Positions 1,003 through 63,831 of a stretch of 64,000 nucleotides of DNA are shown piece after piece (position 1 is the stretch's first letter; the number at the start of each line of letters is the position of its first letter). A program made the position numbers and the translations under genes. The stretch covers positions 63,836 to 127,835 of the forward strand of contig NIVC01002131.1 in the NCBI GenBank assembly GCA_002269645.1, given 5' to 3'. Origin of the DNA: Macrostomum lignano (Eukaryota). The notes beneath the pieces are model-generated. The model ran no database searches and was not told the DNA's origin. It saw only the letters and a program-made list of their open reading frames with translations.

Positions 1003-1212
1003 TGAGAACTGTTTTTGTACGAGAGCATAAAGACGCCACAGTTACGATTCGCGCAAAGATTTCGCTTTTGTATTACGTTAAAGGGGTTTTACCATAGATA
1101 AACGGAAGGAGGTAAACTCTTTTAAAAATAGTACACAATTTCCAAATGCCTCTAAATCTCCTGACGACATTAAGTGTGATTAAAACTAAGCCTGTGTTTT
1201 TGACAGAAAATT

Positions 1213-12354: not shown

Positions 12355-16513
<4,159 letters not shown>

Positions 16514-36773: not shown

Positions 36774-36818
<45 letters not shown>

Positions 36819-43830: not shown

Positions 43831-44575
43831 TCAACCGCACGATTCGTTTTCAACAGGATCTGGCGCGTCGGCAGCCTCGTCATCTCGGCTGATCTGCACT
43901 AGCGGTGGTGGCAAAGGTCGAGACTGCGACTGCTGCTGTTGCAACGCTCCGGTACGTGGTCGGGAAAAATTCGACGCCTGGCCTACACTGGGACCGTCTG
44001 AGTTCAAAGCGCTGTCAGCTGCAGCAGCTGAAATATCGATGGTTTACGGAAGTATACATAAATATCGTCAATATGATTATTTTCGATTCATATCGGCAAG
44101 CCGTACTTTTTCATATAGTAATGCAGTATATTTTGTAGAATACTTTCGATACATATCGGCAAGCTGTACTTTTTCATTTAATAATGTAGGCTATATTTTA
44201 GTATACTTTCGATACATATCGGCAAGTTGTACTTTGCAATATAACAATGCAAGTACTACCTGCTCGCTGGTTGGTTCTATCTGTTGGACTCTGCAAGCTG
44301 CCTACGCTGGGGCTGGACAGGGAGCTCGACAGGTTGCAGCCGCCGCTGCCTCCGCTGGCCGCCAGGCTCAGCACGCCGGGAAAAGTCGGATTGCCGCCGC
44401 CGCTGCGCCCGGATTCTGAGTCGTCTGAAGGCAGGCAGGTCTCGACCATGGCCTCCAGCAGGTTGACGAAATGCTCAGCATGGCCCTTGTTCTGGTTAGC
44501 CTGACAGTTTTGTAGCGGGTTACGAATAGTGCGGCCCACATAGGACTGAATACTGGATTCAGTGAAACTCGCCTA

Positions 44576-44618
<43 letters not shown>

Positions 44619-44643
44619 GCCTGCCTGCCTGTCTGTCTTAGTT

Positions 44644-44710
<67 letters not shown>

Positions 44711-44713
44711 GCC

Positions 44714-44766
<53 letters not shown>

Positions 44767-44769
44767 TGG

Positions 44770-44832
<63 letters not shown>

Positions 44833-44841
44833 ATGTCTGTC

Positions 44842-44903
<62 letters not shown>

Positions 44904-47900
44904 GGTCTGTCTCTGTCTGTCTGTCTGTAGCCACACCCACAGAAACAAGCCAACTCTGCTCAACCCCTCACCTTAGTAAACTGGCCGGAAAAGCGCCACA
45001 GACCGCCAAATCCGATGCTCTGCAAGTAACTGAGCTGCTGCTGCGACGGCTCCTCAGTGCAGAGCATGTTCTGAATAATACTGTGCACTGCATTTAGTAT
45101 TACATAATCGTGACAATTAGACAGAACATTGTTGATCTTGGCGTCAATCAGTGAATAACTAAAAAATTGAAAAGAAAGAAACGCATTCGAAGATCCTGCA
45201 AACTGAAACAATTCAATCATAGCTCACGACTCACATGACGGGGAACACCTTGGAAAATACGACGCTTGCCTCGGCCAGATATTCGTATAGAATTTGAGAC
45301 TCGTTCTCGTCAGTTGTGTTGCGCACCAGGGTCACCTGCGAGTTTTAGGTATTTTAAGGCGGATTAATGAGGCTTGCAAGATTAGGCTGGCCACGAACAA
45401 CTTTTACCCCTCTGCCTAGGGAGTGTACATTGGCCACAAGCATCTCTTACCCCTCTGTCTAGGGAGTGTACATTGGCCACAAGCACCCTCTGTCTAGGGA
45501 GTGTACATTGGCCACAAGCACCCTCTGTCTAGGGAGTGTACATTGGCCACAAGCATCTCTTACCCCTCTGTCTAGGGAGTGTACATTGGCCACAAGCATC
45601 TCTTACCCCTCTGTCTAGGGAGTGTACATTGGCCACAAGCATCTCTTACCCCTCTGTCTAGGGAGTGTACAATGGCCACAAGCACCCTCTGTCTAGGGAG
45701 TGTACATTGGCCACAAGCATCTCTTACCCCTCTGTCTAGGGAGTGTACAATGGTCACAAGCATCTCTTGTCCCTCTGCCCAGGAAGTGTACACTGAAAGC
45801 CCCAACTAACCAGCACAGCCAGCATCAAAGCCTGGGTTCGCTCGTCTCTGATAACCTCCGCATTTAACAGCACGTTGTCGTCGTGACTGGCAGCAGTTGC
45901 AGACGCCGCTGGCGCACCGGCGCGGTCACCCATTCCCGACACCGCCGACTGGCCATTGTTGTTGCCAACGAAGCCGCTGGCACCAGCAGACGACGTCGAC
46001 GTCGGCGGAGGCGGCGGGGCGGCGGCGGGGGCGGCTGAACGGGGGCTGGCGGCGGCTGCTGAGGCGAATTTCGAGCATCAACGCTGCGCGTCCTTGGCGG
46101 AAGGCCGCCGCAGCCGCTGCCGCTACCGGCACCGAGGCTGCCAGAGGCTCCGCCGGCGCCAACAGTGGCGCGCTGCGATTTCAACACGGCGCGCTGAGTC
46201 TGAATGTCAATCTCAAAGCTTTTCCACAATTTCATATTGGACGCGGTTGCCATGCCGACTGGGAGCACTGGGGATAGGAAATTAGCCTACACAGCCAGGG
46301 GAATGAAGGTGAAGAAGAGTGAGAGTGAGTGAGTGTACGACATTCGGCTATGCATAGCACAGCTATTGTTGCGAAACACAAAATGGCTACTATATATAAA
46401 TAAACACATTGGCTACACGTAAACAGGATTTAAGCGGGGACTATGTATCCACATGTATCTAGTATATCCATTCACAGGTTTACTAATTCTATTAAATTTA
46501 TACCATCTTTTACATTCTGTTTTCCGTCTTGTGTTTCATACAGAAAGTCAGAATAACATGCTTAAGCCACACAGCACTACAGATACTAAAATAACTAGAT
46601 ATGCAACTTTTAACTTAAGGATGAAGAGCATCTACTCTTTTCAGTAGTTTGTTTGCACAGTATCGCTTATAAGTTCAATGTGGCAGACAAAAAGTTCCTT
46701 TCCTTCCTCCGGGTTAACAGCCTCAGGACCACATGGGGTTAAGAATGAACAACAAGCATTGAACCTCAATGTACACAAGTGAAGGCAAGACGGACAAAAC
46801 TCAGCCTAGTGGGCAGGCCCAATCTAGCTCAGCCAATGAGAGACAGTGAGGAGACAGCTAGTGGGCAGGCCTAATCTAGCTCAGCCAATGAGAGAGTAGT
46901 AAGGAGACAGCCTAGTGGGCAGGCCTAATCTAGCTCAGCCAATGAGAGAGCAGTAAGGAGACAGCCTAGTGGGCAGGCCCAATCTAGCTCAGCCAATGAG
47001 AGACAGTAAGGAGACAGCTAGTGGGCAGGCCTAATCTAGCTCAGCCAATGAGAGACAGTAAGGAGACAGCCTAGTGGGCAGGCCCAATCTAGCTCAGCCA
47101 ATGAGAGAGCACTGGATTTGGGTGCAGTGCAGCTTCAAACAGATGCGAATTTTATGGGTCTGCTTGTAGAAAGCAAAAGTATGACTTTTGTCTACGGTTG
47201 TATCCACCACAAAACCCAAGCTCACTATGTTCACGTGATTCAGACTTTCCGCTAAGACACCTGCTTTAAGTAAACAAAAAAAACGGTCTAAATAGAATGC
47301 AATGGTATAAAATATCTATTAAAATTCCTGTTACCTAACACTAGAATTATTACATAAGCTTACAAAGCTCATAGTTCGACTGGTTATCACTAATGAGTGC
47401 AATACACCTATAACAATGGGATGCCAATGGGATAGGACACACAGTTTCGGAGCATACAGCACGTGAGAGACAATATTGTAAACACAAATGACTAAAAGCA
47501 TTATAAGAACGAAAGGGCTGATCACACGTCGAAATATAGAATCGCACAGCAATTTCTAAATAAAAACATAAAACGATAAAATATACTACTTAAACCAATA
47601 TCCACCAGTAGTATTATCTATGCTAGATAATTTTAATTAGCCAAGAAGTGACTCGGAAGCGCGCTGGTTTCACGGTTTCTGCCGCATCCAAAAAACTTTT
47701 GATTTTGCGGCAGAAACTTAAATACTGCAGCCAAGCACTACTTATAGTAACAAGATGCAAAATAGGCATAAAGTGTGGTAAATTAGCAAGACAGACACGT
47801 TTTAAATTTGTGCCTAATTTAAATAACTATCCCAGCTCTTAAGCGAGCGTTTATTTGATTATTTAATTTTTGTTTTTGTTATTCTGACAAAAAACTACTT

Positions 47901-50900
47901 AACAAAAATTAAAAGTTCTTCAAAATAATTATAGATTCTAAAATAATTTTTAAACTACTTCCATCATTACTAGGGTTAAGCTAAAGTAGAGAAATTAAAA
48001 TAGAAGTATTACTCTCTACATCGCTCTTCACTCCTCTCTAGATCGCTCATCCCCTCCTTCTAGATCGCTGATCCCCTCTCTCTAGATCGCTGATCCCCTC
48101 TCTCTAGATCGCTGATCCCCTCTCTCTAGATCGCTGATTCCCTCTCTCTAGATCGCTGATCCCCTCTCTAGATCGCTGATCCCCTCACTCTAGATCACTG
48201 ATCCCCTCTCTCTAGATTGCTGATCCCCTCTCTTTAGATCGCTGATCCCCTCTCTCTAGATCGCTGATCCACTCTCTCAAGATCGCTGATCCCCTCTCTC
48301 TAGATCGCTGATCCCCTCTCTAGATCGCTGATCCACTCTCTCTAGATCGCTGATCCCCTCTCTCTAGATCGCTGATCCCCTCTCTCTAGATCGCTGATCC
48401 CCTCTCTCTAGATCGCTGATCCCCTCTCTAGATCGCTGATCCACTCTCTCTAGATCGCTGATCCCCTCTCTCTAGATCGCTGATCCCCTCTCTCTAGATC
48501 GCTGATCCACTCTCTCTAGATCGCTGATCCCCTCTCTCTAGATCGCTGATCCCCTCTCTCTAGATCGCTGATCCCCTCTCTCTAGATCGCTGATCCCCTC
48601 TCTAGATCGCTGATCCCCTCTCTCTAGATCGCTGATCCACTCTCTCTAGATCGCTGATCCCCTCTCTCTAGATCGCTGATCCACTCTCTCTAGATACTGA
48701 TGAAGTGTCGTTTGAGTCGTGACAGTCACAGGGTACGTGGCCTGGATCTGGCATATACACGAACATATAATTGTGTTAAAAATGTGTTAGGGCTAGAACA
48801 GGTGCTGATAGGGCTGGAACTCGGGCGGCACGGGTTTTCGCTCCAGCACCTTAGCGATGGGATATTCCTCATCAATGTCGGGCTGGTAGGACACTGACGT
48901 GCCCGCAGACGGTCGCCAGGGCAGGTCAAGGGTCCGATTGTACAGCCGGTCGAAGTCGATGCCGCTGAACCAGGCGTAGAACCTGGCGGTGCGGCGGTCC
49001 GGCCGGCAGCCCGGCTCGCACAGCAGGCAGTCTTCGACGAAGTCGCGCGCCTCAGGCGACGGCACCGGCCGCTTCACCGGCGGCGGCGCGGCGGCGGCGG
49101 CCATTTTGGCGGCGGACGTTGACGGAGCCTGTCCGCTGATCGCTTGGGCGTCTGATCGATGGGGGCGGAGAAAGCTAAATGATATCCTATGTAGGGATTA
49201 CAGAGTTGTCCATATAGATATCTTTTAGATATCCATATATAGACCACATGCAGATCCTTTACAGATATCCCATAGATATCGCTTATACGTAGAGATTCAA
49301 TATACCGGTAGAGATCCTATACAGAGATCCCATATAGATATCCCACATAGAGATCCCACATAAAGATCCCATTTAGAGATCCCATATATAGATATCCCAC
49401 AAAAAGATCCCATATAGAGATCCCATATAAATACCCACATAAAGATCCCATATAGATATCCCATAAAGATCCCATATAGAGATGCCATATAGAGATCCCA
49501 CATATAGATCTCATACAGATTCCATATAAAGATGCCATATAGAGATTCTATATAGAGATCCCATACAGATATTAAGTAAAAAAATAGCATAGATATCCCA
49601 AAGAATTCCATAGGCTATCCTCATACAGAAATCCCACATCCCAAAACCGCAGATGTTTCAACTGATGCAGTCTGATCCTCACCCAGCAGCCGCTGAGTGA
49701 GCCGGCGCCGATGCTCCTCAGCGGCCAGCGCCTCGGGCAGCAGGCCCCAGTCCACGCGGCCGTCGGCATCAAAAACGTCCTCCTGTTCGCAGAAGCACTC
49801 CTGCCTGAGCAGTTCGTACAGCACCAGGCCGAGTGCGTAAAAATCTACGGGACAGCCGTAGCCTGCAATTGAATGCATGTACAGTGTGCACACACAGTGC
49901 TTCAAGACCAATAGGAGGCTGCTACACTCTGACTCTCTACTGGAAACACTGTCTTCAGGTGTAAGTCTTATTTCACAATTAGGTCAAAGCTCTTCATAAT
50001 TGAATCTAATTTATGTCCAACGTCTACTGTCTATCGAATTAGGTCTACTCTCGGTCTAATTAGGTTTATTCTGTCTAATTAGCTCTGCTCTCTGTCTAAT
50101 TAGGTCTACTCTTTCTAATTACATGTAGGTCTACTCTTTCTAATTACATGTAGGTCTACTTTGTCTAATTACATGTAGGTCTACTTTGTCTAATTACATG
50201 CAGGTCTACTCTTTCTAATTACATGTAGGTCTACTTTTTCTAATTACATGTAGGTCTACTCTGTCTAATTACATGTAGGTCTACTTTTTCTAATTACATG
50301 TAGGTCTACTCTATCTAATTACATGTAGGTCTACTCTGTCTAATTACATGTAGGTCTACTCTGTCTAATTACATGTAGGTCTACTCTGTCTAATTACATG
50401 TAGGTCTACTCTGTCTAATTACATGTAGGTCTACTCTTTCTAATTACATGTAGGTCTACTCTTTCTAATTACATGTAGGTCTACTCTTTCTAATTACATG
50501 TAGGTCTACTCTTTCTAATTACATGTAGGTCTACTCTTTCTAATTAGGTCTGCTCTTTCTAATTAGGTATGCCCTTTCTAATTAGGGCTGCTCTTTCTAA
50601 TTAGGTCTGCCCTTTCTAATTAGGTCTGCTCTTTCTAATTAGGTTTACACAGTCTAATTAGGTCTGGTTTTTGGCTAATTAGGTCTTCTCTTTCTAATTA
50701 GGTCTACTCTGTCTAACTAGGTTTACTCTGCCTTATTGGATCTACCTTTTCTATTTAGGTCTACTTTGTCGATTCAAGTCTATTTTCTGCATATTTAGGT
50801 CCACTCTTCTGCCCTAAGCTTCAACTAAAAGGCATTTCAAGCGAGTCAGCAGGACCCCAGCCGCGCACCTTTGCCATTAAAGTACTCAGGCGCCGCGTAG

Positions 50901-53900
50901 TACCGAAAACACGTGACATCGCGCAACGGCTGCCCATCCTCCGGCAGCACAGCCGTGATGGCAAAGTCGGTGAGCTTCACGTAGCCCCTGGCGTCGACAA
51001 GCAGATTAGCGGATTGAACGTCGCGATGCACACAGCCAACGCAGTGCAGGTACTCCAGGGCCAGCACCGTCTGGGCAGCGATCGCTCTGATGGCGTCCTC
51101 CTGCGGGACGCAAATGTTGGGGGGGGGGCGTTGAAGCTCCTTCTTGATCAGATTGTCACTAAACATCCCGGCTTAATCCCCATCGGATTAGTGTGATTTA
51201 TTTTAACCTAGATGATTTCATATTAGAGTTTGTTATCATCTTCGGCTTAGGTTAGTCCATAGCGGCTTAGTTTCATCCATATCAGCTTAGCTTAATCCAT
51301 ATCGGCTTAGCTTAATCCATATCAGCTTAGCTTAATCCATATCAGCTTAGCTTAATCCATATCAGCTTAGCTTAATCCATATCAGCTTAGCTTAATCCAT
51401 ATCAGCTTAGCTTAATCCATATCAGCTTAGCTTAATCCATATCAGCTTAGCTTAATCCATATCAGCTTAGCTTAATCCATATCAGCTTAGCTTAATCCAT
51501 ATCGGCTTAGCTTAATCCATATCAGCTTAGCTTAATCCATATCAGCTTAGCTTAATCCATATCGGCTTAGCTTAATCCATATCAGCTTAGCTTAATCCAT
51601 ATCGGCTTAGCTTAATTCATATCAGCTTAGCTTAATCCATATCAGCTTAGCTTAATCCATATCGGCTTAGCTTAATCCATATCAGCTTAGCTTAATCCAT
51701 ATCAGCTTAGCTTAATCCATATCGGCTTAGCTTAATCCATATCGGCTTAGCTTAATCCATATCAGCTTAGCTTAATCCATATCAGCTTAGCTTAATCCAT
51801 ATCGGCTTAGCTTAATCCATATCAGCTTAGCTTAATCCATATCGGCTTAGCTTAATCCATATCAGCTTAGCTTAATCCATATCGGCTTAGCTTAATCCAT
51901 ATCAGCTTAGCTTAATCCATATCGGCTTAGCTTAATCCATATCAGCTTAGCTTAATCCATATCAGCTTAGCTTAATCCATATCGGCTTAGCTTAATCCAT
52001 ATCAGCTTAGCTTAATCCATATCAGCTTAGCTTAATCCATATCAGCTTAGCTTAATCCATATCAGCTTAGCTTAATCCATATCAGCTTAGCTTAATCCAT
52101 ATCAGCTTAGCTTAATCCATATCAGCTTAGCTTAATCCATATCAGCTTAGCTTAATCCATATCAGCTTAGCTTAATCCATATCAGCTTAGCTTAATCCAT
52201 ATCAGCTTAGCTTAATCCATATCAGCTTAGCTTAATCCATATCAGCTTAGCTTAATCCATATCAGCTTAGCTTAATCCATATCAGCCTAGCTTAATCCAT
52301 ATCGGCTTAGCTTAATCCATATCAGCTTAGCTTAATCCATATCGGCTTAGCTTAATCCATATCAGCTTAGCTTAATCCATATCAGCTTAGCTTAATCCAT
52401 ATCGGCTTAGCTTAATCCATATCAGCTTAGCTTAATCCATATCAGCTTAGCTTAATCCATATCAGCTTAGCTTAATCCATATCGGCTTAGCTTAATCCAT
52501 ATCGGGCTGGCTTAATCCATATCGGCTTAGCTTAATCCATATCAGCTTAGCTTAATCCATATCAGCCTAGCTTAATCCATATCGGCTTAGCTTAATCCAT
52601 ATCAGCTTAGCTTAATCCATATCGGGCTGGCTTAATCCATATCGGCTTAGCTTAATCCATATCGACTTAGTTGAATAAACTCACCTTAAAATTGCTAACA
52701 ATCCTATTGTCCTCATTTTTTTCATAATAATCCAACAGAGTTCCGTGCGGAAACTCCTCGAGAAAGACGCCAAAGTTGCAGTAGGCGTCAGTAAAGAAGC
52801 CCAGCCCGCTGCGCACAAACGGATGGTCGAAGGCGAACAGCAGCTGCCGCTCTGTCAGGCAGGCTCGAATCTGGCGCTCAAACTCGCCAGCCTTGAAGCC
52901 CAGAGCGGTGAGGTTAAAGTGCACCCGGCTGCAGGTGACTATCTTGCACCGGTAGAGGGTGCCGGTCTTGCGGCTGCGGAATAGAGGACAAACCGCGTGG
53001 TGGCCTGTGGAAGGTTGATGAGATAGTTCCTCATGGTTATAGCAAATTAAAAAAGAAGTAACCCACAGATAACACAGAAAATTCCAATTAATCCCTGGCT
53101 CAGAGTACCAATTAAATCCTGGCTCAGAGTGCCAATTAAATCATGGCTCAGAGTACCAATTAAATCCTGGCTCAGAGTACCAATTAAATCATGGCTCAGA
53201 GTACCAATTAAATCATGGCTCAGAGTACCAATTAAATCATGGCTCAGAGTACCAATTAAATCATGGCTCAGAGTACCAATTAAATCCTGGCTCAGAGTGC
53301 CAATTAAATCATGGCTCAGAGTGCCAATTAAATCATGGCTCAGAATGCCAATTAAACCCTGGCTCAGAGTGCCAATTAAATCATGGCTCAGAGTACCAAT
53401 TAAATCCTGGCTCAGAGTGCCAATTAAACCCTGGCTCAGAGTACCAATTAAATCCTGGCTCAGAGTGCCAATTAAATCATGGCTCAGAGTACCAATTAAA
53501 TCCTGGCTCAGAGTGCCAAATAAACCCTGGCTCAGAGTGCCAATTAAACCCTGGCTCAGAATGCCAATTAAATCCTGGCTCAGAGTGCCAATTAACCCTG
53601 GCTCAGAATGCCAATTAAATCATGGCTCAGGGTGCCAATTAAATCCTGGCTCAGAGTGCCAAATAAACCCTGGCTCAGAGTGCCAATTAAATCCTGGCTC
53701 AGAATGCCAATTAAATCCTGGCTCAGGGTGCCAATTAAATCCTGGCTCAGAGTGCCAATTAAATCCTGGCTCAGAGTGCCAATTAAATCCTGGCTCAGAG
53801 TGCCAATTAAATCCTGGCTCAGAGTGCCAATTAAATCATGGCTCAGAGTACCAATTAAATCTCGATACAGTTAAAGCCGCTCACCTTTTCGAATAGTGTC

Positions 53901-56900
53901 CTCACGTTCAGCCAGCGCCCATTCGGACCAATTGATGCGGCCGAGCGGGCAGTGCTCAGCGTACTCAGCATAGGGAATCGCCATCCGCTGGCGGAACGCC
54001 CCCGGCCAGACCGAGTCTTCAAGCTGGCGATAGCTGGCCGGCTTGGCGCCCACCAGCTGGGCGGCCGGGACACGCAGATTCGGCTGAGGCCGGCTGGGCT
54101 CTTCGCCATCGTCCTCGTCATGGCAACTGGCTACGGCTGGTTGGCTTTTGATTACTGTACATTCTGCGGGGGTGGATTACAGATGCTCAAACCTGAAGAC
54201 CGCTCTTCACCTCTATCTAGACCGCTCTTCTCCTCTATCTAGACCGCTCTTCTCCTCTATCTAGACCGCTCTTCTCCTCTATCTAGACCGCTCTTCTCCT
54301 CTATCTAGACCGCTCTTCTCCTCTATCTAGATCGCTCTTCCCCTCTCTCTCTCTAGATCACTCTTCCCCTCTCTCTCTAGATCGCTCTTCACCTCTATCT
54401 AGACCGCTCTTCTCCTCTATCTAGACCGCTCTTCTCCTCTATCTAGACCGCTCTTCTCCTCTCTCTCTCTAGATCGCTCTTCCCCTCTCTCTCTCTAGAT
54501 CACTCTTCCCCTCTCTCTCTAGATCGCTCTTCACCTCTATCTAGACCGCTCTTTACCTCTATCTAGACCGCTCTTCACCTCTATCTAGATCGCAATAAAA
54601 GCAGCAAATTACCATTCTCTACGCCCGAGTCTCCGTGGCAGTTGGCAGCAGTAGCAGAAGCAGTCGACAATTTTGACGTCTCATCCAGAAGGCTATCCTG
54701 GTTGTCGCTGGCGCTCAATCCGCTCATTTTATCACTTAAAGTTCTTTGATCAGTTTATTGTATTTGCTAAGCAGAGTAGAAGCACAGATTCTATATACTC
54801 CTAGATGGACCACTCCAGCAGCCTGGCCGCAGAGCGAAAACCCAGGGGTTCAGACCATAGACTATAGCTTCTGCTGTGCTGCTCTCAAGCCTTAGCACTC
54901 GGAGGAAACCACTTGAAAAGCATTCGAATCTGACTGACATGGTCGCAGCCAATGTCTGTGGCCCTAACCTCGGGGTTTTTCGGGGCCTCAGAGACGGCCG
55001 CTAAATATGTATGACTGCAAATAAGCTATCCAGGCTATAAATAGTTGTTAGCTGCGCTTCAGCGAGGCTTGCGAGTCACCATGGCAACTACAGTGTATGA
55101 TAAACATGAGCACATACAAGCGGGCAAATACAGTACTCAGGCACGCACTTGTACACACGCTCACACAGGGTGTACAGCAGCCCTTTGACTTTCCAATCGT
55201 CAGACATGTACACTTTCTGTGCCTTGGGGCTTGGCTCTGATGGCTGTGCATCGCACGACAACTCCCCCCGGCCAATTTTTGAGCACAAAAGCCCCAAATG
55301 AATGCGGTCGCGAGGGGAACCGAACCAGGAACCAGGGGGGGGGGGGGGAGTCAGATGCGTTCACCGCTGCAGAGCCGCTCTTACCCTCACCATGACAACT
55401 AATTAACAAAACAAATTTCAACAAACTTGAAACAATAATTGCTACTCATAAATAGTTAGAAAAAATGAGCAAACAGAACCGATTAAGAGTCCAAGTGAAA
55501 AGTGCAGCTGGGTTACTATGCAGGGAACATGGAACGGAAAGCACAAACTAACACAAGTGCGCGAACAATTAAAAGGTAAAATCGGTGATTCAATTAGTTA
55601 AAATAAACACAAATTGCAATGTAGGAAAATGGGAACAAAAAACACAAAGCTAAAGCAGACAACAAAATGTAATTTAAAAAACACACACACACAAGTACAC
55701 ACAGATACCAACAGATAGTGGAGGCTTTGATGTTTTGACCAATTTAATGCTTGCTTCGAATTAACAAGGCTGTTCGGACAAGTTGGTCATGAAAAATCTA
55801 CTACAGAATGAAATTCAGGCAATTATTTTTTAATCGCCAATCGAGTAATTGCGGGGACTTCCGCATGGCAACCGGTCGCAGCTCGCGCAATAACAGAGAA
55901 AATTAAACAGGTAAAATTAGTTGACAAAAAGGTGTAAAAAATAAGTTAAACTAGTCCATCCTTATTTCATTCGATTTCAGTTTTATTTCAATATCTAATC
56001 TACAAGCCTTCTAATTTGATTTGATAGGTAGACAGAGGGATGAGATGGGTTGGGTAGGGAGCGGACAGGTGGGTAGACTACAGACATAAGTGGGTAGATT
56101 GTGTAGATATGGGTAGGTAGCGGAGGTTGGTAGATAAATGGCGGACAGAGGTGGTTAGATAGTGGGCAGAGGTGGGCGGGCAAAGGTGGGTAGATAGCGG
56201 AGAGGTGGGTAGATAGCGAACAAAGGTGGGTAGATAGCGAACAGAGGCGGATAGATAGCGAACAGAGGCGGATAGATAGCGGACAGAGGCGGGTAGGTAG
56301 CGGGCCGAGGCGGGTAGATAGCGGAGAGGTGGGTAGATAGCGGACAGAGGCGGATAGATAGCAAACAGAGGCGGATAGATAGCGGACAGAGGCGGATAGA
56401 TAGCGAACAGAGGCGGATAGATAGCGGACAGAGGCGGATAGATAGCGAACAGAGGCGGATAGATAGCGAACAGAGGCGGATAGATAGCGAACAGAGGCGG
56501 ATAGATAGCGGACAGAGGCGGATAGATAGCGAACAGAGGCGGATAGATAGCGGACAGAGGCGGATAGATAGCGAACAGAGGCGGATAGATAGCGGATAGA
56601 GGTGTGTAGATAGCGGATAGAGGCGGGTAAATAGCGGACAGAGGTGGGTAGATAGCGGGCAGAGGTGGGTAGGTAGCGAACAGAGGCGGGTAGGTAGCGG
56701 ACGGAGGTGGGTAGATAGCGAACAGAGGCGGATAGATAGCGAACAGAGGCGGATAGATAGCGGACAGAGGCGGATAGATAGCGAACAGAGGCGGATAGAT
56801 AGCGAACAGAGGCGGATAGATAGCGAACAGAGGCGGATAGATAGCGGACAGAGGCGGGTAGGTAGCGGGCCGAGGCGGGTAGATAGCGGAGAGGTGGGTA

Positions 56901-59900
56901 GATAGCGGACAGAGGCGGGTAGATAGCAGAAAAGGTGGGTAGATAGCTGCTTTTGATAGCTTTTATCACCTGCAATAACTAATTATTTCATAATTAAATT
57001 GCTGACACAACAAAACTGGTCCAGAAGAGAAAACCTAATTGAATTAATTGAGCTAAAGAACTTAATAGCCTAATTGTATGCGAAATTTACTGCTTAAATC
57101 TGATAGATCAATTTTAAGTCATTGTAGGCAGTGTCTATAGTGCGCTATATTATAATAAAAAGATTTGTTTAAACAGTAAACGCGGAAAGCGCCATTAACG
57201 TAGATGAAATTATTTTGTAAAAAATATTAAACAACTAAAACTTTGCAAACCGTAAACTAATTATAAAAGAAGACGCACCTGAGACAGCTGATAGGCCTGT
57301 TGCTTCTGGGCGACAGTCGGTCTGCCAGATGTGCCAGCAGCATCAGCTGGAGCTCCGCCGGCTGCTGCAGCTGCGGCGGCGTCGCAGCACTTCTGACGCA
57401 CAACAACTGGACCAGCGGCAGAGTTAGAGAATGGTGAAGCTTGCGACGGCTGCTGTTGAAGCAGAGGCGGAGAAGAACTGTTGCCAAGGCCAGGCGAAAC
57501 GGCTTGCAAATGCTGCTGCTGCTGCTGTTGCAGTTCGCTCACACTCTCCGTTGAATTGCTTTCAACAACCATTGCTCCCATCATCTGGCAGGCTGGATTG
57601 TGCAGCGGCGGGATGGGATGCAAATTGGCAATGCATGACTCGAAGATTTAGTATATGTTGACTAGCCACTTTCGCACCCCCTTCGAGTGGTCTAAATAAC
57701 CCGATCAAAACGATTGACCAATCTGATCTATTTTTGCTTTTAGCCCTTGAACAGTATTTTTAGTGGAAAAGAATCGCCAGTGGGGGGTAAAGTTAAGCAA
57801 AACGGGCGCGGTTAGTACGCAACTGAATAGGGCTCATATTATCAGTTATTACAGTACTGTAGTACGTCTACTAGTACGAATTCAAGATATTAGTACATAC
57901 AATACAATGTATAGCGCTTACGCTTGACATGAAATCGAAGATGGCAGCGGCTGCGGACTTCCTCGGAGACGGCGACCAGGGCGGTTAGGTAAGCCACGCT
58001 GTTTGGCGTCACCTCGTATTTGTCTCTATTATTGGGCGATTCAGAATTAGAATAGAAAAGTATTAAGATAATAACAATTTACTTATCGCACTACTTAATC
58101 CAGATGAGCAGTAGTGCAATACGCGCATTATTCTGTTATTAACTAACCGCTTCTCCGGCTTGGCCACGATAGACAGTAGCATGGATAGAACTCGAATTGT
58201 GCGCGACAGAGTTTTAGGACTGGGATGGCGGAAACCCTTCAACAGGTGGCCAACTAGGGCGAAGTGAAAATTCTCGCGGAATGACAGGCCGACACAGTTG
58301 TCCAGCTGTTTGTAAGAGATGTGCAGGATTAGCGGCTGCCGGTATTCCATCATTATGCTCTCCAATGAGCGATCGGTGAACATGCCTGGAAAATTTGTAT
58401 TGGCAGACAGGGGAGCGGAGCTTTGTAACATGCTGTTTTATGGAGATCTAAGAATGCAGCTAGTGAGGTATGACCCTAGTTGCTATGACACCAGTTGTTA
58501 TGACTAAAGTTGCTATGACACCAGTTGTTATGGCTAAAGTTGCTATGACACCAGTTGTTATGGCTAAAGTTGCTATGACACCAGTTGTTATGGCTAAAGT
58601 TGCTATGACACCAGTTGTTATGACTAAAGTTGCTATGACACCAGCTGTTATGACTAAAGTTGCTATGATACCAGTTGTTATGACTAAAGTTGCTATGACA
58701 CCAGTTGTTATGACTAAAGTTGCTATGACACCAGTTGTTATGACTAAAGTTGCTATGACACCAGCTGTTATGACCAAAGTTGCTATGATACCAGCTGTCA
58801 TGACCAAATTTGCTATAACACCAGCTGCTATGACCTCACTTGCGATTCTATGACCATGATCACTAACAGCAATGAGTACTGGGCCCAGTTTTGATAATTG
58901 AAATAACTAAAAAACACGCAGGTAAGCAAATTCTCACCCTGATTATCGAGATTGTCCAAGCTCTGCTCTAGCAGGGCCAGTCCGGCAGCGTACAGGCTGA
59001 CCTCGTCCAACTGCAGCACGCACAGGGCAATCCAGAAGATGTGCTTATGTATTGGCGAGTTCGGGTTCAACAGCGGCAGCAGGCGAGTCACCGACATTAT
59101 AGTAGCTTCGATTAGCGTCAGGTCGGAGTTCCACTGCGACTCGACGCCCCTGTGCATGCGGACGTCCTTGTCGATGACTTCGAGGTCGCGCGCGTAGCTC
59201 TCTAGCGATTTGACCATGATTCGCAGCAGATGCTTGATCTCGTTCTCCGATACGGACTTGGAGATGCAGCCGAGTACAATGATTGCGCGGTACTGCAGCG
59301 CCGGATTGTGCTGGAAAGCGAATCTCTTGGCTAGCTGGGTCCACTGCTCCAGCCAGTTGCAGTTCGGGATGTCCTTCATCACGGCTGCGAGAGGACGGGG
59401 CGATGATTAGCCAGTATGCTGAGCAGTGTGGGATTTGCGACACTGAGCAGTGTGGGATTCGGACAGTGAGCAGTGTGGGATTTGGGACACTGAGCAGTGT
59501 GGGATTTGCGACACTGAGCAGTGTGGGATTTGCGACACTGAGCAGTGTGGGATTCGGGACAGTGAGCAGTGTGGGATTTGGGACACTGAGCAGTGTGGGA
59601 TTTGCGACACTGAGCAGTGTGGGATTTGCGACACTGAGCAGTGTGGGATTTGGAACAGTGATTAGTGTGGGATTTGGGACACTGAGCAGTGTGGGATTTG
59701 GGACACTGAGCAGTGTGGGATTTGGGACAGTAAGCAGTGTGGGATTCGGGACAGTGAGCAGTGTGGGATTTGGGACACTGAGCAGTGTGGGATTTGGGAC
59801 ACTGAGCAGTGTGGGATTTGGGACAGTGATTAGTGTGGGATTTGGGACACTGAGCAGTGTGGGATTTGGCACACTAAGCAGTGTGGGATTTGGGACAGTA

Positions 59901-62900
59901 AGCAGTGTGGGATTCGGGACAGTGAGCAGTGTGGGATTTGCGACACTGAGCAGTGTGGGATTTGGGAAAATGAGCAGTGTGGGATTTGGGACAATGAGCA
60001 GTGTGGGATTTGGCACACTAAGCAGTGTGGGATTTGGGACAGTAAGCAGTGTGGGATTCGGGACAGTGAGCAGTGTGGGATTTGCGACACTGAGCAGTGT
60101 GGGATTTGCGACACTGAGCAGTGTGGGATTTGGGACAATGAGCAGTGTGGGATTCGAGACAGTGAGCAGTGTGGGATTTGGACACTGAGCAGTGTGGGAT
60201 TTGGGACAGTAAGCAGTGTAGGATTCGGGGCAGTGAGCAGTGTGGGATTTGGGAAAATGAGCAGTGTGGGATTTGGGACAATGAGCAGTGTGGGATTCGA
60301 GACAGTGATTAGTGTGGGATTTGGGACACTGAGCAGTGTGGGATTTGCGACAGTGAGCAGTGTGGGATTTGGGACAGTGATTAGTGTGGGATTGGGACAC
60401 TGAGCAGTGTGGGATTCGGGACAGTGAGCAGTGTGGGATTCGGGACAGTGAGCAGTGTGGGATTTGGGAAAATGAGCAGTGTGGGATTTGGGACAATGAG
60501 CAGTGTGGGGATTTGGGACACTGATCAGTGTGGGGATTTGGGACACTGAGCAGTGTGGGGATTTGTGACAATGAGCAGTGTGGGATTTGGGACAATGAGC
60601 AGTGTGGGATTGGGACAATGAGTGTGAACTTTGGGTGAAAATGATAACACTGACAAGTGTGGGATTTCTGGTCTTTACCATTGCAATTATTAAAGACAAA
60701 TATCAAATCATTCTCACCCGACAGAACTTCCAGCAGGGTGTCAGTGAGCAGTTCCAGACTGCTCAATGGCAGCCGTTCGGCACTATGCACCGAAGAAGAA
60801 GTGTTGCCGGAGGCGGCGGCAGCAGCAGCGGCAGCGGCAGCGGCGGCAGCTGCAGCTGCAGATGCGGTCTCGCCGGCGCTGGAGACGGTCCGCTCGCCTG
60901 ACTTGGTACGGAAAGCGCTCACTGCGGCGCTTTTAATAGAAGAGATGCCGAATACCTGGTAGTACTCGGTCAGGGTGAACTCGGTCAGGTAATGCTTTAG
61001 GTGGTGCAAGGTGCTCTCTGTGTTGGGACATAGCGGAGGCGAAATGTTGTTAAAGAGTAGTTAGGTAAACGGCTTTTTATTGTGTTTGTATATTCTTAAC
61101 GAGATTGTAACGGATTATTCAACCTAATGGTTCTAAAAGGGTTTCCAAGCTGCTTTGAAAGATCGGGCGTTTGATTCTTTAGCGAATCAGGGCCGGCTAG
61201 ATGGGGGATCAGGGTCGGCTAGATGGGGGATCAGGGTCGACTAGATGGGGGGATCAGGATCGACTAGATGGGGGGGGCGGATCAGGATTGACTAGATGGG
61301 GGATCAGGATTGACTAGATGGGAGCGGATCAGGATTGACTAGATGGGGTGATCAGGATTGACTAGATGGGGGCGGATCAGGATTGACTAGATGGGGGGAT
61401 CAGGATTGACTAGATGGGGGGCGGATCAGGATCAACTAGATGGGGGGATCAGGATCGACTAGAGAGGGGGGCGGATCAGGATCGACTAGATGGGGGGCGG
61501 ATCAGGATCAACTAGATGGGGGATCAGGATCGACTAGATGGGGGCGGATCAGGATCAACTAGATGGGGGGATCAGGATCGACTAGAGAGGGGGCGGATCA
61601 GGATCGACTAGATGGGGGCGGATCAGGATCAACTAGATGGGGGGATCAGGATCGACTAGAATGGGGCGGATCAGGATCAACTAGATGGGGGGATCAGGAT
61701 CGACTAGATGGGGGGGCGGATCAAGATCGACTGGATGGGGGATCAGGATCGACTAGATGGGGGCGGATCAAGATCGACTGGATGGGGGGATCAGGATCGA
61801 CTAGATGGGGGGCGGATCAGGATCAACTAGATGGGGGCGGATCAGGATCAACTAGATGGGGGCGGATCAAGATCGACTGGATGGGGGATCAGGATCGACT
61901 AGATGGGGGGCGGATCAGGATCAACTAGATGGGGGCGGATCAGGATCAACTAGATGGGGGGCGGATCAAGATCGACTGGATGGGGGGATCAGGATCGACT
62001 AGATGGGGGGCGGATCAGGATCAACTAGATGGGGGCGGATCAGGATCAACTAGATGGGGTGGGGCGGATCAAGATCGACTGGATGGGGGGATCAGGATCG
62101 ACTAGATGGGGGGTGGATCAGGATCAACTAGATGGGGGCGGATCAGGATCAACTAGATGGGGTGGGGCGGATCAAGATCGACTGGATGGGGGGATCAGGA
62201 TCGACTAGATGGGGGGCGGATCAGGATCAACTAGATGGGGCGGATCAGGATCGACTAGATGGGGGGCGGATCAAGATCGACTGGATGGGGGATCAGGATC
62301 AACTAGATGGGGGCGGATCAAGATCGACTAGAGAGGGGGGCGGATTAGGATCGACTAGATGGGGGGCGGATCACTAGATGGGGGGGCGGATCACTAGATG
62401 GGGGGGCGGATCACTAGATGGGGGGGCGGATCACTAGATGGGGGGGGCGGATCACTAGATGGGGGGGGATCACTAGATGGGGGGCGGATCACTAGATGGG
62501 GGGGGCGGATCACTGGATGGGGGGATCAGGATCGACTAGATGGGGGGCGGATCAGGATCAACTAGATGGGGCGGATCAGGATCGACTAGATGGGGGGGCG
62601 GATCACTAGATGGGGGGCGGATCACTAGATGGGGGGCGGATCACTAGATGGGGGGCGGATCACTAGATGGGGGGGCGGATCACTAGATGGGGGGCGGATC
62701 ACTAGATGGGGGGGCGGATCACTAGATGGGGGGCGGATCACTAGATGGGGGGGGGCGGATCACTGGATGGGGGGTTAGTGAACCAAGGGTTAGGGTGAGT
62801 GTAGCGTACCGCTAAGCTCGAGCTGGCAGGTGCACAGCGAATGAATAATGTTGATAACGAGGCCGTGAATTGAGGCTCGCAGCGACACTGGGCCGGTGCA

Positions 62901-63791
62901 CACCAGCAGTGTGACAATGTGGAACAGCAGCGGCAAATGGGCGGCAACTGAAAGTTAAGCAGAAAAAAAAGCGGGACTTATGACGACGAGCAGTCCGGAG
63001 TTCAAATCCTGTCTTAACAGTTATTGCATAATTTAAATTAATTAATTAAACAATTAATTAAAAGACATTATACTGTTAAACTATAAGGCATGTATCGAAA
63101 AAACACAAAATTAACAAGAAGTTAAAGTTAGTTTGTAAATACAGAAAGTCTAAACATGATGTCCGATATGTATTGAAAAAAAATATAAACAATGATGAAT
63201 ATTACCATTTAACGAATTATTAAATGACAGCATTAGCAGGAAGCGCAGTAGAATAGCGATGTCATTCCACATGTTGTGCGCCTCCAAAGTTGACGTGGGC
63301 GAAGTGCAAGTCTCAGCGATTATCTGTAATTTCAATTGCATTTTTGCAAACAGAAATGCATACTACACTACTAACTAGTATAAAAATAGAAACAGTGATG
63401 ATGATAATAATTCTTGCTTACGCGGCACAGTCTTGTGATGACCTTTTTTGACACTAGCTGAACATTCGACGCCGCCAGAGCGACGGCCGTGTCGGCCATG
63501 ACCTCCGCTGGCAGGCTGCCAAACCCCCGGCTACGCTTCGTTTAATAAAGCAATTCAGCACAATGTCCAATAAGTCGTGCAGTTCGCCAAAGTTCGACCA
63601 GATTTTCGCCTGAAAGTTGGGTACATCTCCACCTGCGACAGCGTGACGCTAATGAGCTTGTCCAGAATGCACACCACCTTCTGGCGCTTGTTCTCGTCTG
63701 GGTGCCGACAGAAGCGGACCAGATTCTTTAGCCAGGGACTCATGTACTCGAGGCACAGGTGCTTCATCTCGATGGAGGACTGCTGGAAGCC
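43831..63791 (-). CDS. NF1: Neurofibromin, C-terminal part (5' part lies beyond the window); exons 63791-63422, 63323-63206, 62947-62810, 61017-60718, 59384-58938, 58385-58148, 58025-57922, 57592-57279, 46267-45811, 45335-45235, 45158-44972, 44500-44260, 44027-43831
   Basis: [24 protein letters not shown]; [21 protein letters not shown]; [24 protein letters not shown]; [13 protein letters not shown]; [18 protein letters not shown]; [16 protein letters not shown]; [16 protein letters not shown]; [19 protein letters not shown]; [19 protein letters not shown]; [17 protein letters not shown]. All are near-identical to the known NF1 C-terminus. Single-base frameshifts at about 63614, 63519, 46017 and probably 46262. 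Confidence 0.95.
44576..44928. repeat. (CTGT)n microsatellite, NF1 intron
   Basis: Read directly. Confidence 0.96.
45400..45790. repeat. 43-bp minisatellite (TCTAGGGAGTGTACATTGGCCACAAGCATCTCTTACCCCTCTG) with shorter variants, NF1 intron
   Basis: Read directly. Confidence 0.9.
46803..47107. repeat. 53-bp tandem repeat containing AGCCAATGAG, about 6 copies
   Basis: Read directly. Confidence 0.9.
48035..48695. repeat. 22-bp minisatellite (TCTAGATCGCTGATCCCCTCTC)n
   Basis: Read directly. Confidence 0.93.
48793..54727 (-). CDS. Degenerate AGC (PKA/PRKX-like) protein kinase, about 494 aa, nested in an NF1 intron; exons 54727-54613, 54163-53885, 53004-52685, 51100-50869, 49862-49683, 49151-48793
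   Basis: Spliced product has consistent phases. [10 protein letters not shown] (beta3 Lys), TERQLL..FDHPF (alphaC), [91 protein letters not shown] (AGC tail). Confidence 0.88.
49195..49610. repeat. Degenerate ATAGAGATCCC-type repeat, kinase intron
   Basis: Read directly. Confidence 0.8.
50030..50720. repeat. 25-bp minisatellite (TAATTACATGTAGGTCTACTCTTTC)n with degenerate flanks, kinase intron
   Basis: Read directly. Confidence 0.9.
51270..52665. repeat. 20-bp minisatellite (ATCAGCTTAGCTTAATCCAT)n, about 70 copies, kinase intron
   Basis: Read directly. Confidence 0.96.
53085..53865. repeat. 24-bp minisatellite (CCAATTAAATCCTGGCTCAGAGTG)n, kinase intron
   Basis: Read directly. Confidence 0.94.
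54205..54592. repeat. 22-bp minisatellite (TCTAGACCGCTCTTCTCCTCTA)n, kinase intron 1
   Basis: Read directly. Confidence 0.9.
55075..55088. promoter_or_regulatory. Candidate RFX X-box upstream of the nested kinase
   Basis: GTCACCATGGCAAC matches the DAF-19/RFX consensus GTHNYY-AT-RRNAAC exactly, about 350 bp upstream of the ATG. A second near-match lies at 55386-55399 and a TATA/MEF2-like CTATAAATAG at 55035-55044. Confidence 0.5.
56030..56945. repeat. 21-bp minisatellite (GATAGATAGCGGACAGAGGCG)n, NF1 intron
   Basis: Read directly. Confidence 0.92.
58470..58840. repeat. 30-bp minisatellite (TTGCTATGACACCAGTTGTTATGACTAAAG)n, NF1 intron
   Basis: Read directly. Confidence 0.92.
59415..60665. 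repeat. 24-bp minisatellite (GAGCAGTGTGGGATTTGGGACACT)n, about 50 copies, NF1 intron
   Basis: Read directly. Confidence 0.95.
61195..62775. repeat. G-run minisatellite (GATCAGGATCGACTAGATGGGGGGCG)n with a 19-20-bp variant, NF1 intron
   Basis: Read directly. Confidence 0.93.
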
Positions 63792-63831
63792 CTGCAAACA
63801 GTGCGGAATGTACATATAGTTGACGCCTCAA

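What the first reader, a model, noticed from the sequence alone, without database searches (positions are those of the whole stretch)
46268..57278. Complete six-exon kinase gene nested on the same strand inside an 11-kb NF1 intron
Seen: unmistakable NF1 exons lie on both sides (57592-57279 and 46267-45811). The kinase has its own ATG, stop, candidate promoter and a minus-strand AATAAA at 47850-47855. Known: most nested genes are antisense; human NF1 hosts OMG/EVI2A/EVI2B antisense in a different intron, and NF1 is linked to cAMP/PKA signalling in Drosophila. Inferred: NF1 pre-mRNA must skip six exons and a poly(A) site; in cells expressing the kinase, truncated or chimeric NF1-kinase transcripts, or mutual exclusion, are possible.
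Basis: partly seen in the sequence, partly recalled or inferred. Interest (0 to 1): 0.7.

Follow-up and report, generated by a model that had tools for sequence, protein, structure and literature searches.

The report
Kinase gene nested inside flatworm NF1 intron
In the flatworm Macrostomum lignano, a complete six-exon gene for an unusual PKA-like kinase lies on the same strand inside an 11-kb intron near the 3' end of NF1, and an old duplicate NF1 locus has the same layout, so it is real and ancient but an ordinary kind of nested gene.

Summary
The window is the last 64 kb of Macrostomum lignano contig NIVC01002131.1 (assembly Mlig_3_7).

**Confirmed**
- NF1 exons flank the interval on the minus strand. 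They match human neurofibromin residues 2200-2436 upstream and 2578-2765 downstream.
- Between them lies a six-exon, 494-aa kinase gene with all GT-AG introns. Its protein is identical to the transcript-based GenBank entry PAA60631.1.
- The AATAAA at 47855-47850 is present.

**Corrected**
The in-frame acceptor is 46286, which makes the intron 46287-57278 (10,992 nt).
- In this copy the downstream NF1 exon has a 1-nt frameshift in a C-rich run. A sister copy is intact there.

**Against mis-assembly**
- Three near-identical contigs share the layout.
- A divergent paralogous locus (kinase 56% identical) also has NF1 exon, six-exon kinase, then NF1 3' exons on one strand. The nesting therefore predates that duplication.

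**The kinase**
- It is not a PKA orthologue. It belongs to a family seen only in M. lignano and one unidentified RNA-seq organism.
- It keeps K72, E91, D166, N171 and D184 but has a degenerate glycine loop, HRDxQxxN and DFA.

**Untested**
- No transcript shows the NF1 splice across the kinase, spliced-leader use, or chimeras.
- Two chimeric UniProt entries come from the older annotation; whether transcripts support them is unknown.

Verdict: a new member of a known kind, of modest interest.

The parts
58938..59384 (-). NF1 exon W1 (...[15 protein letters not shown]...DNLDNQG), conserved C-terminal region
   Evidence: GT-AG, phase 1 in and phase 1 out. Aligns to human neurofibromin from residue 2200. 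tblastn with P0013 and P0009.
58148..58385 (-). NF1 exon W2 (MFTDRSLES...IVAKPEK)
57922..58025 (-). NF1 exon X ([34 protein letters not shown])
   Evidence: Aligns to human residues up to 2436.
57279..57592 (-). NF1 exon Y, a low-complexity Q/A-rich linker exon. Its donor TCTCAG|gtgcgt (phase 0) starts the host intron.
   Evidence: Phases fit exon X. 100% identical in L001 and L002. A homologous exon with SMVIESNSNDSLSE lies in the paralogous locus L006.
46287..57278 (-). NF1 host intron, 10,992 nt. It contains the whole kinase gene plus minisatellite arrays.
   Evidence: Boundaries. Tandem arrays.
54613..54727 (-). Kinase coding exon A (ATG at 54727). The 5' UTR extent is unknown.
   Evidence: An in-frame stop lies 9 codons upstream.
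53885..54163 (-). Kinase exon B
52685..53004 (-). Kinase exon C: degenerate glycine loop RKGHHAVC, beta3 Lys in YRCKIV, alphaC Glu
50869..51100 (-). Kinase exon D ([14 protein letters not shown])
49683..49862 (-). Kinase exon E
48793..49151 (-). Kinase exon F, ending ...PYQHLF-TAG (a PKA-like FxxF-type C-terminus)
47850..47867 (-). Candidate kinase poly(A) signals: ATTAAA 47867-47862 and AATAAA 47855-47850. They lie 925-937 nt after the stop, beyond a 684-nt 22-mer array (48012-48695).
   Evidence: Usage is untested.
54791..54797 (-). TATATAG, 70 nt upstream of the kinase ATG. Candidate core promoter element only.
   Evidence: Not conserved in the paralogue.
54697..54698 (-). Phase-0 cryptic acceptor inside kinase exon A (aaccag|GATAGC; an exon would start at 54697). 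UniProt model A0A1I8INE0 uses it to fuse NF1 exon Y to the kinase in frame.
45811..46286 (-). NF1 exon Z (ANFLSP...[14 protein letters not shown]...[24 protein letters not shown]). The true in-frame acceptor is at 46286.
   Evidence: The K-W-K/R-S-L/F-D/E motif is shared with NF1 of other animals. The 3' part aligns to human residues from 2578.
46015..46025 (-). 1-nt deficit in a C-rich run that frameshifts exon Z in this copy and in L002. L001 is intact.
46267..46267 (-). It is out of frame with exon Y but in phase with the donors of kinase exons A, B, D and E.
45235..45335 (-). NF1 exon Z2 ([33 protein letters not shown])
44972..45158 (-). NF1 exon Z3 ([10 protein letters not shown]...[14 protein letters not shown])
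44260..44500 (-). NF1 exon Z4 ([24 protein letters not shown]...)
43831..44027 (-). NF1 last coding exon Z5, with TGA at 43833-43831
   Evidence: Homologous to the last exon in L006 (PPPLVKISQDS).

Best explanation
This is a true sense-oriented nested gene in Macrostomum lignano. An independent, transcript-supported, six-exon gene lies wholly inside a 10,992-nt intron in the 3' part of NF1. The intron corresponds to the disordered linker between human neurofibromin residues about 2436 and 2578. The gene encodes a divergent PKA-like (AGC-type) kinase seen only in this flatworm and one unidentified relative.

The arrangement is old. NF1 and the kinase were duplicated together, and both paralogous loci keep the kinase in the same NF1 intron on the same strand with the same six-exon phase pattern.

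Most likely mechanism (inferred, not shown):
1. The kinase is transcribed as its own unit and ends at its own poly(A) site.
2. NF1 polymerases read through.
3. On the NF1 pre-mRNA, the donor of kinase exon A lies closer to the acceptor of exon B than NF1's own donor does. The kinase exons therefore join to each other.
4. The joined block has no 5' acceptor and no 3' donor, so it is discarded when NF1 donor 57279 pairs with acceptor 46286.
5. Mis-splicing of the NF1 donor to kinase exon B would be out of frame, with a stop after three codons, so it would be non-productive rather than a fusion protein.

The kinase keeps the catalytic Lys, Glu, Asp, Asn and Asp residues. It has a degenerate glycine loop, Gln in place of the catalytic-loop Lys, and DFA in place of DFG. 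Its activity is therefore uncertain.
For: **Identity of the DNA**
- The best kinase hits are M. lignano proteins.
- The window kinase equals PAA60631.1 on contig NIVC01002131.1, and the window end coincides with the contig end.

**Kinase gene**
- Six GT-AG exons give a 1,485-nt ORF.
- Pkinase scores 112 bits. The best PDB sequence and fold matches are PKA.
- The GenBank annotation of this assembly comes from a genome-guided RNA-seq transcriptome (PMC5730564), and it calls the kinase as a separate 494-aa gene at all three loci.

**NF1 on both sides**
- A phase-consistent GT-AG model is colinear with human neurofibromin 2200-2436 and 2578-2765.

**Not an assembly artefact**
- L001, L002 and L007 (the window) all show NF1-up, kinase, NF1-down.

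**Ancient arrangement**
- In L006 (NIVC01004360.1) the 56%-identical paralogue P0129 has six exons with the same phases.
- It is preceded by an exon-Y homologue and followed by an intact exon-Z homologue plus three more NF1 exons and a last exon.

**Selection on the kinase**
- The motif set is conserved among P0001, P0003 and P0004.
- Copies differ by 10 synonymous and 4 non-synonymous codon changes.

**Independent mRNA in a relative**
- RNA contigs L003 and L004 carry only the kinase ORF, with in-frame stops upstream.
Against: - No transcript or read was available that shows the NF1 junction 57279->46286. A protein search with the junction peptide found nothing. The public annotation ends NF1 several exons upstream of the kinase, at a position I only estimated by collinearity.
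- In this copy and in L002, exon Z is frameshifted. These particular NF1 copies could therefore be defective, unless the shift is a homopolymer assembly error.
- The kinase promoter, 5' end and poly(A) site are not determined.
- Two UniProt models fuse NF1 and the kinase. If they rest on transcripts, they would point to chimeras.
- In L006 the upstream conserved NF1 exons lie beyond the contig end. The exon-Y' donor there is assigned only by homology and phase.
Confidence: 0.72

Rival explanations
1. Intronic 'operon-like' coupling. The kinase has no promoter of its own. Its mRNA is cut out of the NF1 pre-mRNA by spliced-leader trans-splicing at an acceptor upstream of the ATG, followed by polyadenylation. 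Each NF1 primary transcript would then yield either NF1 mRNA or kinase mRNA, giving mutually exclusive outputs and co-regulation.
For: [quoted passage not shown] About 7% of assembled transcripts are precursors that carry several genes (PMC8629364 and PMC5730564).
- Matches to the trans-splice acceptor motif [T/C]TNCAG lie 288 and 640 nt upstream of the ATG, and a TTGCAG match lies in the 300 nt upstream of the paralogue's ATG.
- The sense arrangement is retained in both paralogous loci.
Against: - No SL-containing read or contig was available. The SL sequence is absent from the related transcripts L003 and L004.
- The distances from the NF1 donor to the ATG (2.55 kb) and from the stop to the NF1 acceptor (2.5 kb) exceed the 1-kb operon criterion of PMC8629364.
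- An upstream cis donor (exon Y) would compete with the SL for any such acceptor.
- The motif is short and expected by chance.
Confidence: 0.13
2. The kinase exons are alternative exons of NF1. They would give NF1-kinase or kinase-NF1 fusion proteins rather than a separate gene.
For: - UniProt A0A1I8INE0 (P0130) joins NF1 exon Y in frame to the kinase through a phase-0 acceptor inside exon A, with the exon starting at 54697.
- A0A1I8F8L8 (P0005) joins kinase exon F to NF1 exon Z.
- Acceptor 46267 is in phase with four kinase donors.
Against: - Both models come from the older, error-rich assembly and contain frameshifted stretches.
- The cryptic acceptor has no obvious counterpart in the paralogue: the one AG inspected near the start of its exon A is in a different phase (sequence shown; inspection by eye, not a computed scan).
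- The RNA-seq-based annotation calls a separate 494-aa gene.
- The kinase ORF has its own ATG preceded by an in-frame stop, and a conserved C-terminal ...HLF-stop.
- Related transcripts are kinase-only.
- The canonical junction of exon Y to exon B is out of frame.
Confidence: 0.05
3. The 3' NF1 exons downstream of the kinase are no longer used. NF1 would end upstream, and these exons would be relics or a degenerating copy. The kinase would then sit between a truncated NF1 and dead exons rather than being nested.
For: - Exon Z is frameshifted in two of three near-identical copies.
- The public annotation ends NF1 upstream and leaves these exons unannotated.
Against: - All five downstream exons keep GT-AG sites and open frames apart from the single C-run indel.
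- They are 59-93% identical in protein to the old paralogue and align to human NF1 2578-2765. That indicates long-term purifying selection.
- One copy (L001) is fully open.
- The indels sit in homopolymer C runs and differ between copies, which is typical of long-read assembly error.
- Transcript assemblies in this genome break in repeat-rich introns (PMC8629364).
Confidence: 0.07
4. Mis-assembly, or the two NF1 halves come from different paralogues or haplotypes.
For: The genome is repeat-rich and partly polyploid, and the assembly is redundant (PMC5730564).
Against: - Four independent contigs (three near-identical and one divergent) show the same order and strand.
- The flanks are 95-100% collinear between copies.
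Confidence: 0.02

Closest known systems
Human NF1 intron 27b nested genes (OMG, EVI2A, EVI2B)
   Different: The human genes are antisense, sit in a different (central) intron and are unrelated to kinases. Here the guest is sense-oriented, lies in the C-terminal linker intron and is specific to the Macrostomum lineage. The two cases are independent, not homologous.
Cholinergic gene locus (VAChT nested in the first intron of ChAT, same strand)
   Same: A sense-oriented nested gene retained over long evolutionary time. It is a precedent for a host and a guest being made from one locus on one strand (my own knowledge, not tested here).
   Different: In the cholinergic locus the two genes share a 5' exon and promoter and act in one pathway. 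No shared exon, shared promoter or functional link is shown here.
cAMP-dependent protein kinase catalytic subunit (PKA-C, AGC group)
   Same: - It is the best sequence match in the PDB (E about 1e-20) and the best fold match.
- K72, E91, D166, N171, D184 and APE align, and the protein ends in an F/Y-x-x-L-F carboxy-terminus like the PKA FxxF.
   Different: - About 27% identity.
- The glycine loop keeps one of three glycines.
- HRDxQxxN replaces the Lys168 motif, and DFA replaces DFG.
- There is a ~10-aa insert after beta3, a ~40-aa insert before the C-tail and a 130-aa N-terminal extension.
- No orthologue was found outside this lineage among 1.84 billion representatives.
- Pfam AGC C-terminal domain PF00433 was not detected.
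M. lignano SL trans-spliced operons (PMC8629364)
   Same: Same-strand neighbouring genes in a genome where polycistronic precursors are common.
   Different: Operon genes lie one after another with about 100-bp (under 1 kb) spacers. Here the guest is inside an intron, 2.5 kb from either host exon, and SL use is unknown.

Membership tests
Neurofibromin (NF1) as host gene | C-terminal region colinear with neurofibromin on both sides of the intron | tested here: met
   phmmer against the PDB gives human neurofibromin 2200-2436 (268 bits) and 2578-2765 (157 bits), total E=6.7e-126. NF1 orthologues of many phyla were hit.
Neurofibromin (NF1) as host gene | RasGAP, CRAL-TRIO and PH domains in the same gene | tested here: inconclusive
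   These domains lie outside the window because the contig ends. In sister locus L002 the gene called just upstream carries PF00616, PF13716 and PF21877. UniProt models P0013 and P0130 link CRAL-TRIO/PH sequence to exons W1-Y.
Nested (intronic) gene | The whole guest gene (start codon to poly(A) signal) lies between two exons that are spliced together in the host mRNA | tested here: inconclusive
   The geometry, splice sites and phases fit. No M. lignano transcript spanning 57279->46286 could be obtained.
Nested (intronic) gene | The arrangement is reproducible in independent assemblies or loci | tested here: met
   Three near-identical contigs and one divergent paralogous contig.
Eukaryotic protein kinase superfamily | Pfam Pkinase above the gathering threshold | tested here: met
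   PF00069 scores 112.2 bits against a cut-off of 31.7.
AGC group / PKA-like | Closest to AGC kinases, with a C-terminal tail carrying a hydrophobic motif | tested here: inconclusive
   The top PDB hits are PKA, AKT, PKG and STK32. The C-terminus Y-Q-H-L-F lies at the carboxy-terminal tail, like the PKA FSEF, though the MAFFT columns do not pair them residue for residue. PF00433 was not detected, and the AF2 model is weak in the tail (mean pLDDT 56.9).
PKA catalytic subunit orthologue | Orthology to PKA-C across animals, with canonical GxGxxG, HRDLKPEN and DFG motifs | tested here: not met
   27% identity. The motifs are [16 protein letters not shown] and DFA. The family appears only in M. lignano and one unidentified RNA-seq organism.
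Catalytically active kinase | beta3 Lys, alphaC Glu, catalytic Asp and Asn, and Mg-binding Asp present | tested here: met
   K152, E183, D265, N270 and D283 align with PKA K72, E91, D166, N171 and D184. The HMMER pairwise alignment instead put Thr at K72, so this rests on the MAFFT alignment.
Catalytically active kinase | Glycine-rich loop, catalytic-loop Lys and DFG Gly | tested here: not met
   One of three glycines is kept, Lys168 is replaced by Gln, and DFG is replaced by DFA. All three changes are conserved in both paralogues and in P0004. Activity needs an assay.
M. lignano operon (PMC8629364 criteria) | The downstream gene is SL trans-spliced and lies within 1 kb (repeat-adjusted) of the upstream gene | not testable with these tools
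   No SL-read data were available. Raw distances are about 2.5 kb, of which about 0.75 kb is tandem repeat.

The most novel reading that the evidence does not exclude
NF1 and the nested kinase form one regulated unit that has been kept together through a gene duplication. The kinase mRNA would be released from the NF1 primary transcript by spliced-leader trans-splicing or intronic polyadenylation. Each NF1 transcript would then become either neurofibromin mRNA or kinase mRNA, which would be a built-in switch between a Ras-GAP and a PKA-like kinase or pseudokinase.
Probability: 0.1. Interest if true: 0.6.

Novelty: new member of a known kind. Interest (0 to 1): 0.3.

Why it matters
- **Annotation.** The public M. 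lignano annotation appears to end NF1 several exons early and leaves its last exons unannotated on this contig. Older UniProt entries fuse NF1 with the kinase. This analysis gives a phase-consistent model for the NF1 exons present in the window (nine from 59384 to the stop) and for the kinase.
- **Biology.** A sense-oriented guest gene has been retained in the same NF1 intron in two old paralogous loci. That is a clean natural case for asking how a host pre-mRNA ignores six good exons and a poly(A) signal, in an animal that is transgenic-tractable and also uses spliced-leader trans-splicing.
- **Limits.** Sense-nested genes are common, about a third of nested genes in human. The kinase is not a PKA orthologue, so no special NF1-PKA link is implied.

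Tried and rejected
- **My first kinase model.** I joined exon B to an acceptor at 52973 and it was out of phase. The annotated protein P0001 showed the true acceptor at 53004.
- **Catalytic lysine.** I first read the catalytic Lys as lost, because HMMER aligned HFNLT to PKA HYAMK. MAFFT with the paralogues places YRCKIV on YAMKIL with a 10-aa insert, so I no longer call it a dead kinase.
- **Locus-tag suffix 'g2'.** I considered the 'g2' in the paralogue's tag (BOX15_Mlig014081g2) as evidence of a polycistronic unit. The naming rule in PMC5730564 is ambiguous because prefixes are cluster names, so I did not use it.
- **Gene IDs in the literature.** Searching main texts and two sets of supplements for the four Mlig gene IDs found nothing.
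- **Junction peptide search.** A protein search with the NF1 exon Y-Z junction peptide returned nothing. It did not even return the known P0130, so the search is insensitive on this low-complexity sequence.
- **Promoter comparison.** Aligning the kinase upstream regions of the two paralogues showed no conserved element.
- **Structure.** The AlphaFold model had low confidence (pLDDT 56.9). The fold search only confirms 'protein kinase, PKA-like'.
- **NF1 from another organism.** P0098 and its locus L005 have the Y-Z equivalent in one uninterrupted ORF with no kinase. The organism is unidentified, so this says little about flatworms.

Full report
**Source of the window.** A search with my first kinase model returned Macrostomum lignano proteins at 97% identity. 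Cluster look-up and contig look-up showed three GenBank proteins. PAA68955.1 and PAA85016.1 are the same sequence (P0001). PAA60631.1 is P0128. They sit on three contigs of assembly GCA_002269645.1 (Mlig_3_7). The window's kinase is identical to P0128. The 9,273 nt upstream of its ATG equal the distance to the end of contig NIVC01002131.1. The window is therefore the last 64 kb of that contig, reversed.

**The kinase gene.** Six coding exons lie on the minus strand: 54727-54613, 54163-53885, 53004-52685, 51100-50869, 49862-49683 and 49151-48793.
- All have AG acceptors and GT[G/A]AG-type donors, and they give a 1,485-nt ORF of 494 aa.
- An in-frame stop lies nine codons upstream of the ATG.
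A 684-nt 22-mer array lies between the stop and these signals.
- The GenBank annotation of this assembly is derived from a genome-guided RNA-seq transcriptome whose gene ends were set from trans-splice and poly(A) reads (PMC5730564). The separate 494-aa gene therefore has transcript support.

**NF1 on both sides.** On the same strand I could build a phase-consistent GT-AG model.
- Upstream exons: 59384-58938, 58385-58148, 58025-57922 and 57592-57279.
- Downstream exons: 46286-45811, 45335-45235, 45158-44972, 44500-44260 and 44027-43831 (stop).
- More NF1 exons lie further upstream, up to 63812.
- The joined product matches human neurofibromin 2200-2436 and 2578-2765 and NF1 of many phyla.
- The 5' part of exon 46286-45811 carries the motif [14 protein letters not shown]. 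This corresponds to K(V/H)W(R/K)SLD(L/I)... in other animals' NF1.

- Exon 57592-57279 ends in phase 0. The acceptor at 46267 is phase 1 and runs into a stop after 11 codons. The acceptor 19 nt upstream (exon start 46286) is phase 0 and correct. The host intron is 46287-57278, 10,992 nt.
- In the window and in L002 the exon is 476 nt and changes frame in a C-rich run near 46019. In L001 it is 477 nt and open. The copies differ only in the lengths of homopolymer C runs. I think an assembly error is the likelier cause, but a real defect in some copies is not excluded.

**Not a mis-assembly.** tblastn of the NF1 upstream block, the kinase and the NF1 downstream block gives the same order and strand on L001, L002 and L007, which is the window. 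Megablast collinearity was run against L001 only, at 95-99% identity (the L002 run failed). Blastn of the exon Y and exon Z regions found both exons in L001 and L002.

**The arrangement is old.** The kinase has a paralogue, P0129 (PAA47700.1, 518 aa, 56% identical), on contig NIVC01004360.1 (L006).
- It has six coding exons whose lengths have the same remainders modulo 3 as those of the window's gene.
- About 1.6 kb downstream, on the same strand, lies an open 405-nt exon. It encodes ...MKGWKSFEIDAQTQR...[23 protein letters not shown] and is followed by clear homologues of the remaining NF1 exons.
- Upstream, at 628-777, is a homologue of the low-complexity exon (SMVIESNSNDSLSE against [14 protein letters not shown]). 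It has a phase-0 donor at the homologous position.
- The contig ends before the conserved upstream NF1 exons.

NF1 and its guest were therefore duplicated together, and both copies kept the nesting. Transcript contigs from an unidentified organism (SRR30276804 and SRR30276812) encode a 506-aa relative that is closer to the paralogue (66.5%) than to the window's kinase (54.6%). They contain only the kinase ORF, with in-frame stops upstream and no spliced-leader sequence.

**What the kinase is.**
- Pfam Pkinase is clearly met. The best solved relatives by sequence and by fold are PKA catalytic subunits, followed by AKT, PKG and STK32.
- A profile search of 1.84 billion representatives found only the P0004 cluster and M. 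lignano fragments above 350 bits. Everything else was generic or multi-domain kinases at 230 bits or less. The family has so far been seen only in M. lignano and that one unidentified organism.
- Aligned with human PKA-C alpha, K152, E183, D265, N270, D283 and APE correspond to K72, E91, D166, N171, D184 and APE.
- The glycine loop is RKGHHAVC, the catalytic loop is HRDVQSAN, and DFG is DFA. The protein ends in YQHLF. These features are conserved in both paralogues and in the other organism.
- Between near-identical copies there are 10 synonymous and 4 non-synonymous codon changes.
- It is a maintained gene whose catalytic competence is uncertain.

**How it probably works (inferred).** Full-length NF1 needs donor 57279 to pair with acceptor 46286 across the guest.
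- On a read-through NF1 pre-mRNA, the donor of kinase exon A is nearer to the acceptor of exon B than the NF1 donor is. The kinase exons would therefore join to each other.
- The joined block lacks a 5' acceptor and a 3' donor and would be removed with the intron.
- Direct use of the exon B acceptor by the NF1 donor would be out of frame (AAT GTA CAG TAA).
- A phase-0 cryptic acceptor inside exon A (exon start 54697) could give an in-frame NF1-kinase fusion, and UniProt A0A1I8INE0 is such a model.
- A0A1I8F8L8 fuses kinase exon F to NF1 exon Z.
- Both models come from the older assembly's annotation, and P0005 contains frameshifted stretches. I treat them as a sign that gene predictors merge the two genes, not as transcript evidence.

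**The trans-splicing alternative.** About 30% of M. lignano genes receive a spliced leader and about 15% lie in operons (PMC8629364). A live alternative is therefore that the kinase mRNA is released from the NF1 precursor by trans-splicing. Motif matches exist 288 and 640 nt upstream of the ATG, but they are short and no SL data could be consulted.

**Context and novelty.** About 63% of human nested genes are antisense (PMC3192792), so sense nesting is a minority but ordinary state. I found no paper mentioning these genes. This is a new instance of a known kind of arrangement. Its most interesting features are its retention through a duplication and the practical corrections to the NF1 and kinase annotation.

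Noticed in passing
window 46015-46025 (minus strand), compared with L001:18060-18536 and L002:17712-18187: NF1 exon Z is 476 nt in the window and in L002, which frameshifts it. It is 477 nt and open in L001. The copies differ only in the lengths of C homopolymers, which suggests an assembly or polishing error, but a real defect is not excluded.
   Followed up: partly
window 43831-63812 (minus strand); L002:1-1020: GenBank ends its 2,131-aa NF1 model roughly 9 kb upstream of the kinase. By my collinearity estimate that is near window 63.5 kb. On this contig NF1 is not annotated at all, so the NF1 exons from 59384 to the stop at 43831 (nine in my model), and any further upstream, are missing from the public annotation.
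   Followed up: partly
UniProt A0A1I8INE0 (P0130) and A0A1I8F8L8 (P0005); window 54697 and 46286: Two database proteins are NF1-kinase chimeras. One joins NF1 exon Y to an acceptor inside kinase exon A. The other joins a donor inside kinase exon F to NF1 exon Z. Both come from the older assembly's annotation.
   Followed up: partly
It is in phase with the donors of kinase exons A, B, D and E, so an exon E to NF1 exon Z chimera would read through in frame. This may be coincidence.
   Followed up: no
L006 (NIVC01004360.1) 628-11457: A second, divergent NF1 locus (NF1-B) exists, with its own nested kinase paralogue (PAA47700.1). Its last exon keeps the RMRHGSSS motif, which the window's NF1 last exon lacks.
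   Followed up: partly
window 48012-48695, 49309-49569, 50101-50762, 51245-52663, 53084-53861, 54197-54593, 56201-56947, 58478-58834, 59419-60622, 61186-62774: Almost every intron of both genes is filled by a different minisatellite array with a period of 13-30 nt, up to 1.6 kb long. Array lengths differ between the three near-identical copies, which accounts for most of the differences in intron length.
   Followed up: partly
window 12448-14889 (minus), possibly extending to 16495: An intact 813-aa ORF with reverse transcriptase and RNase H domains, which looks like a non-LTR retrotransposon. The adjacent upstream ORFs have no Pfam hit.
   Followed up: partly
window 10345-11148 (plus): An exon encoding a complete polycystin cation-channel domain (PF08016, 211 bits). 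A PKD2-like gene lies on the opposite strand.
   Followed up: no
window about 31555-40534 (minus): An SMG6/EST1-like gene (EST1 DNA/RNA-binding domain plus PIN domain) starts about 3.3 kb downstream of the NF1 stop on the same strand. It is annotated in GenBank as a 1,088-1,300-aa protein.
   Followed up: partly
window 19084-19782 and 20397-20885 (minus): Cysteine-rich exons with ephrin-receptor-like / TNFR-type repeats and a transmembrane-looking segment. This is an unannotated receptor-like gene.
   Followed up: no
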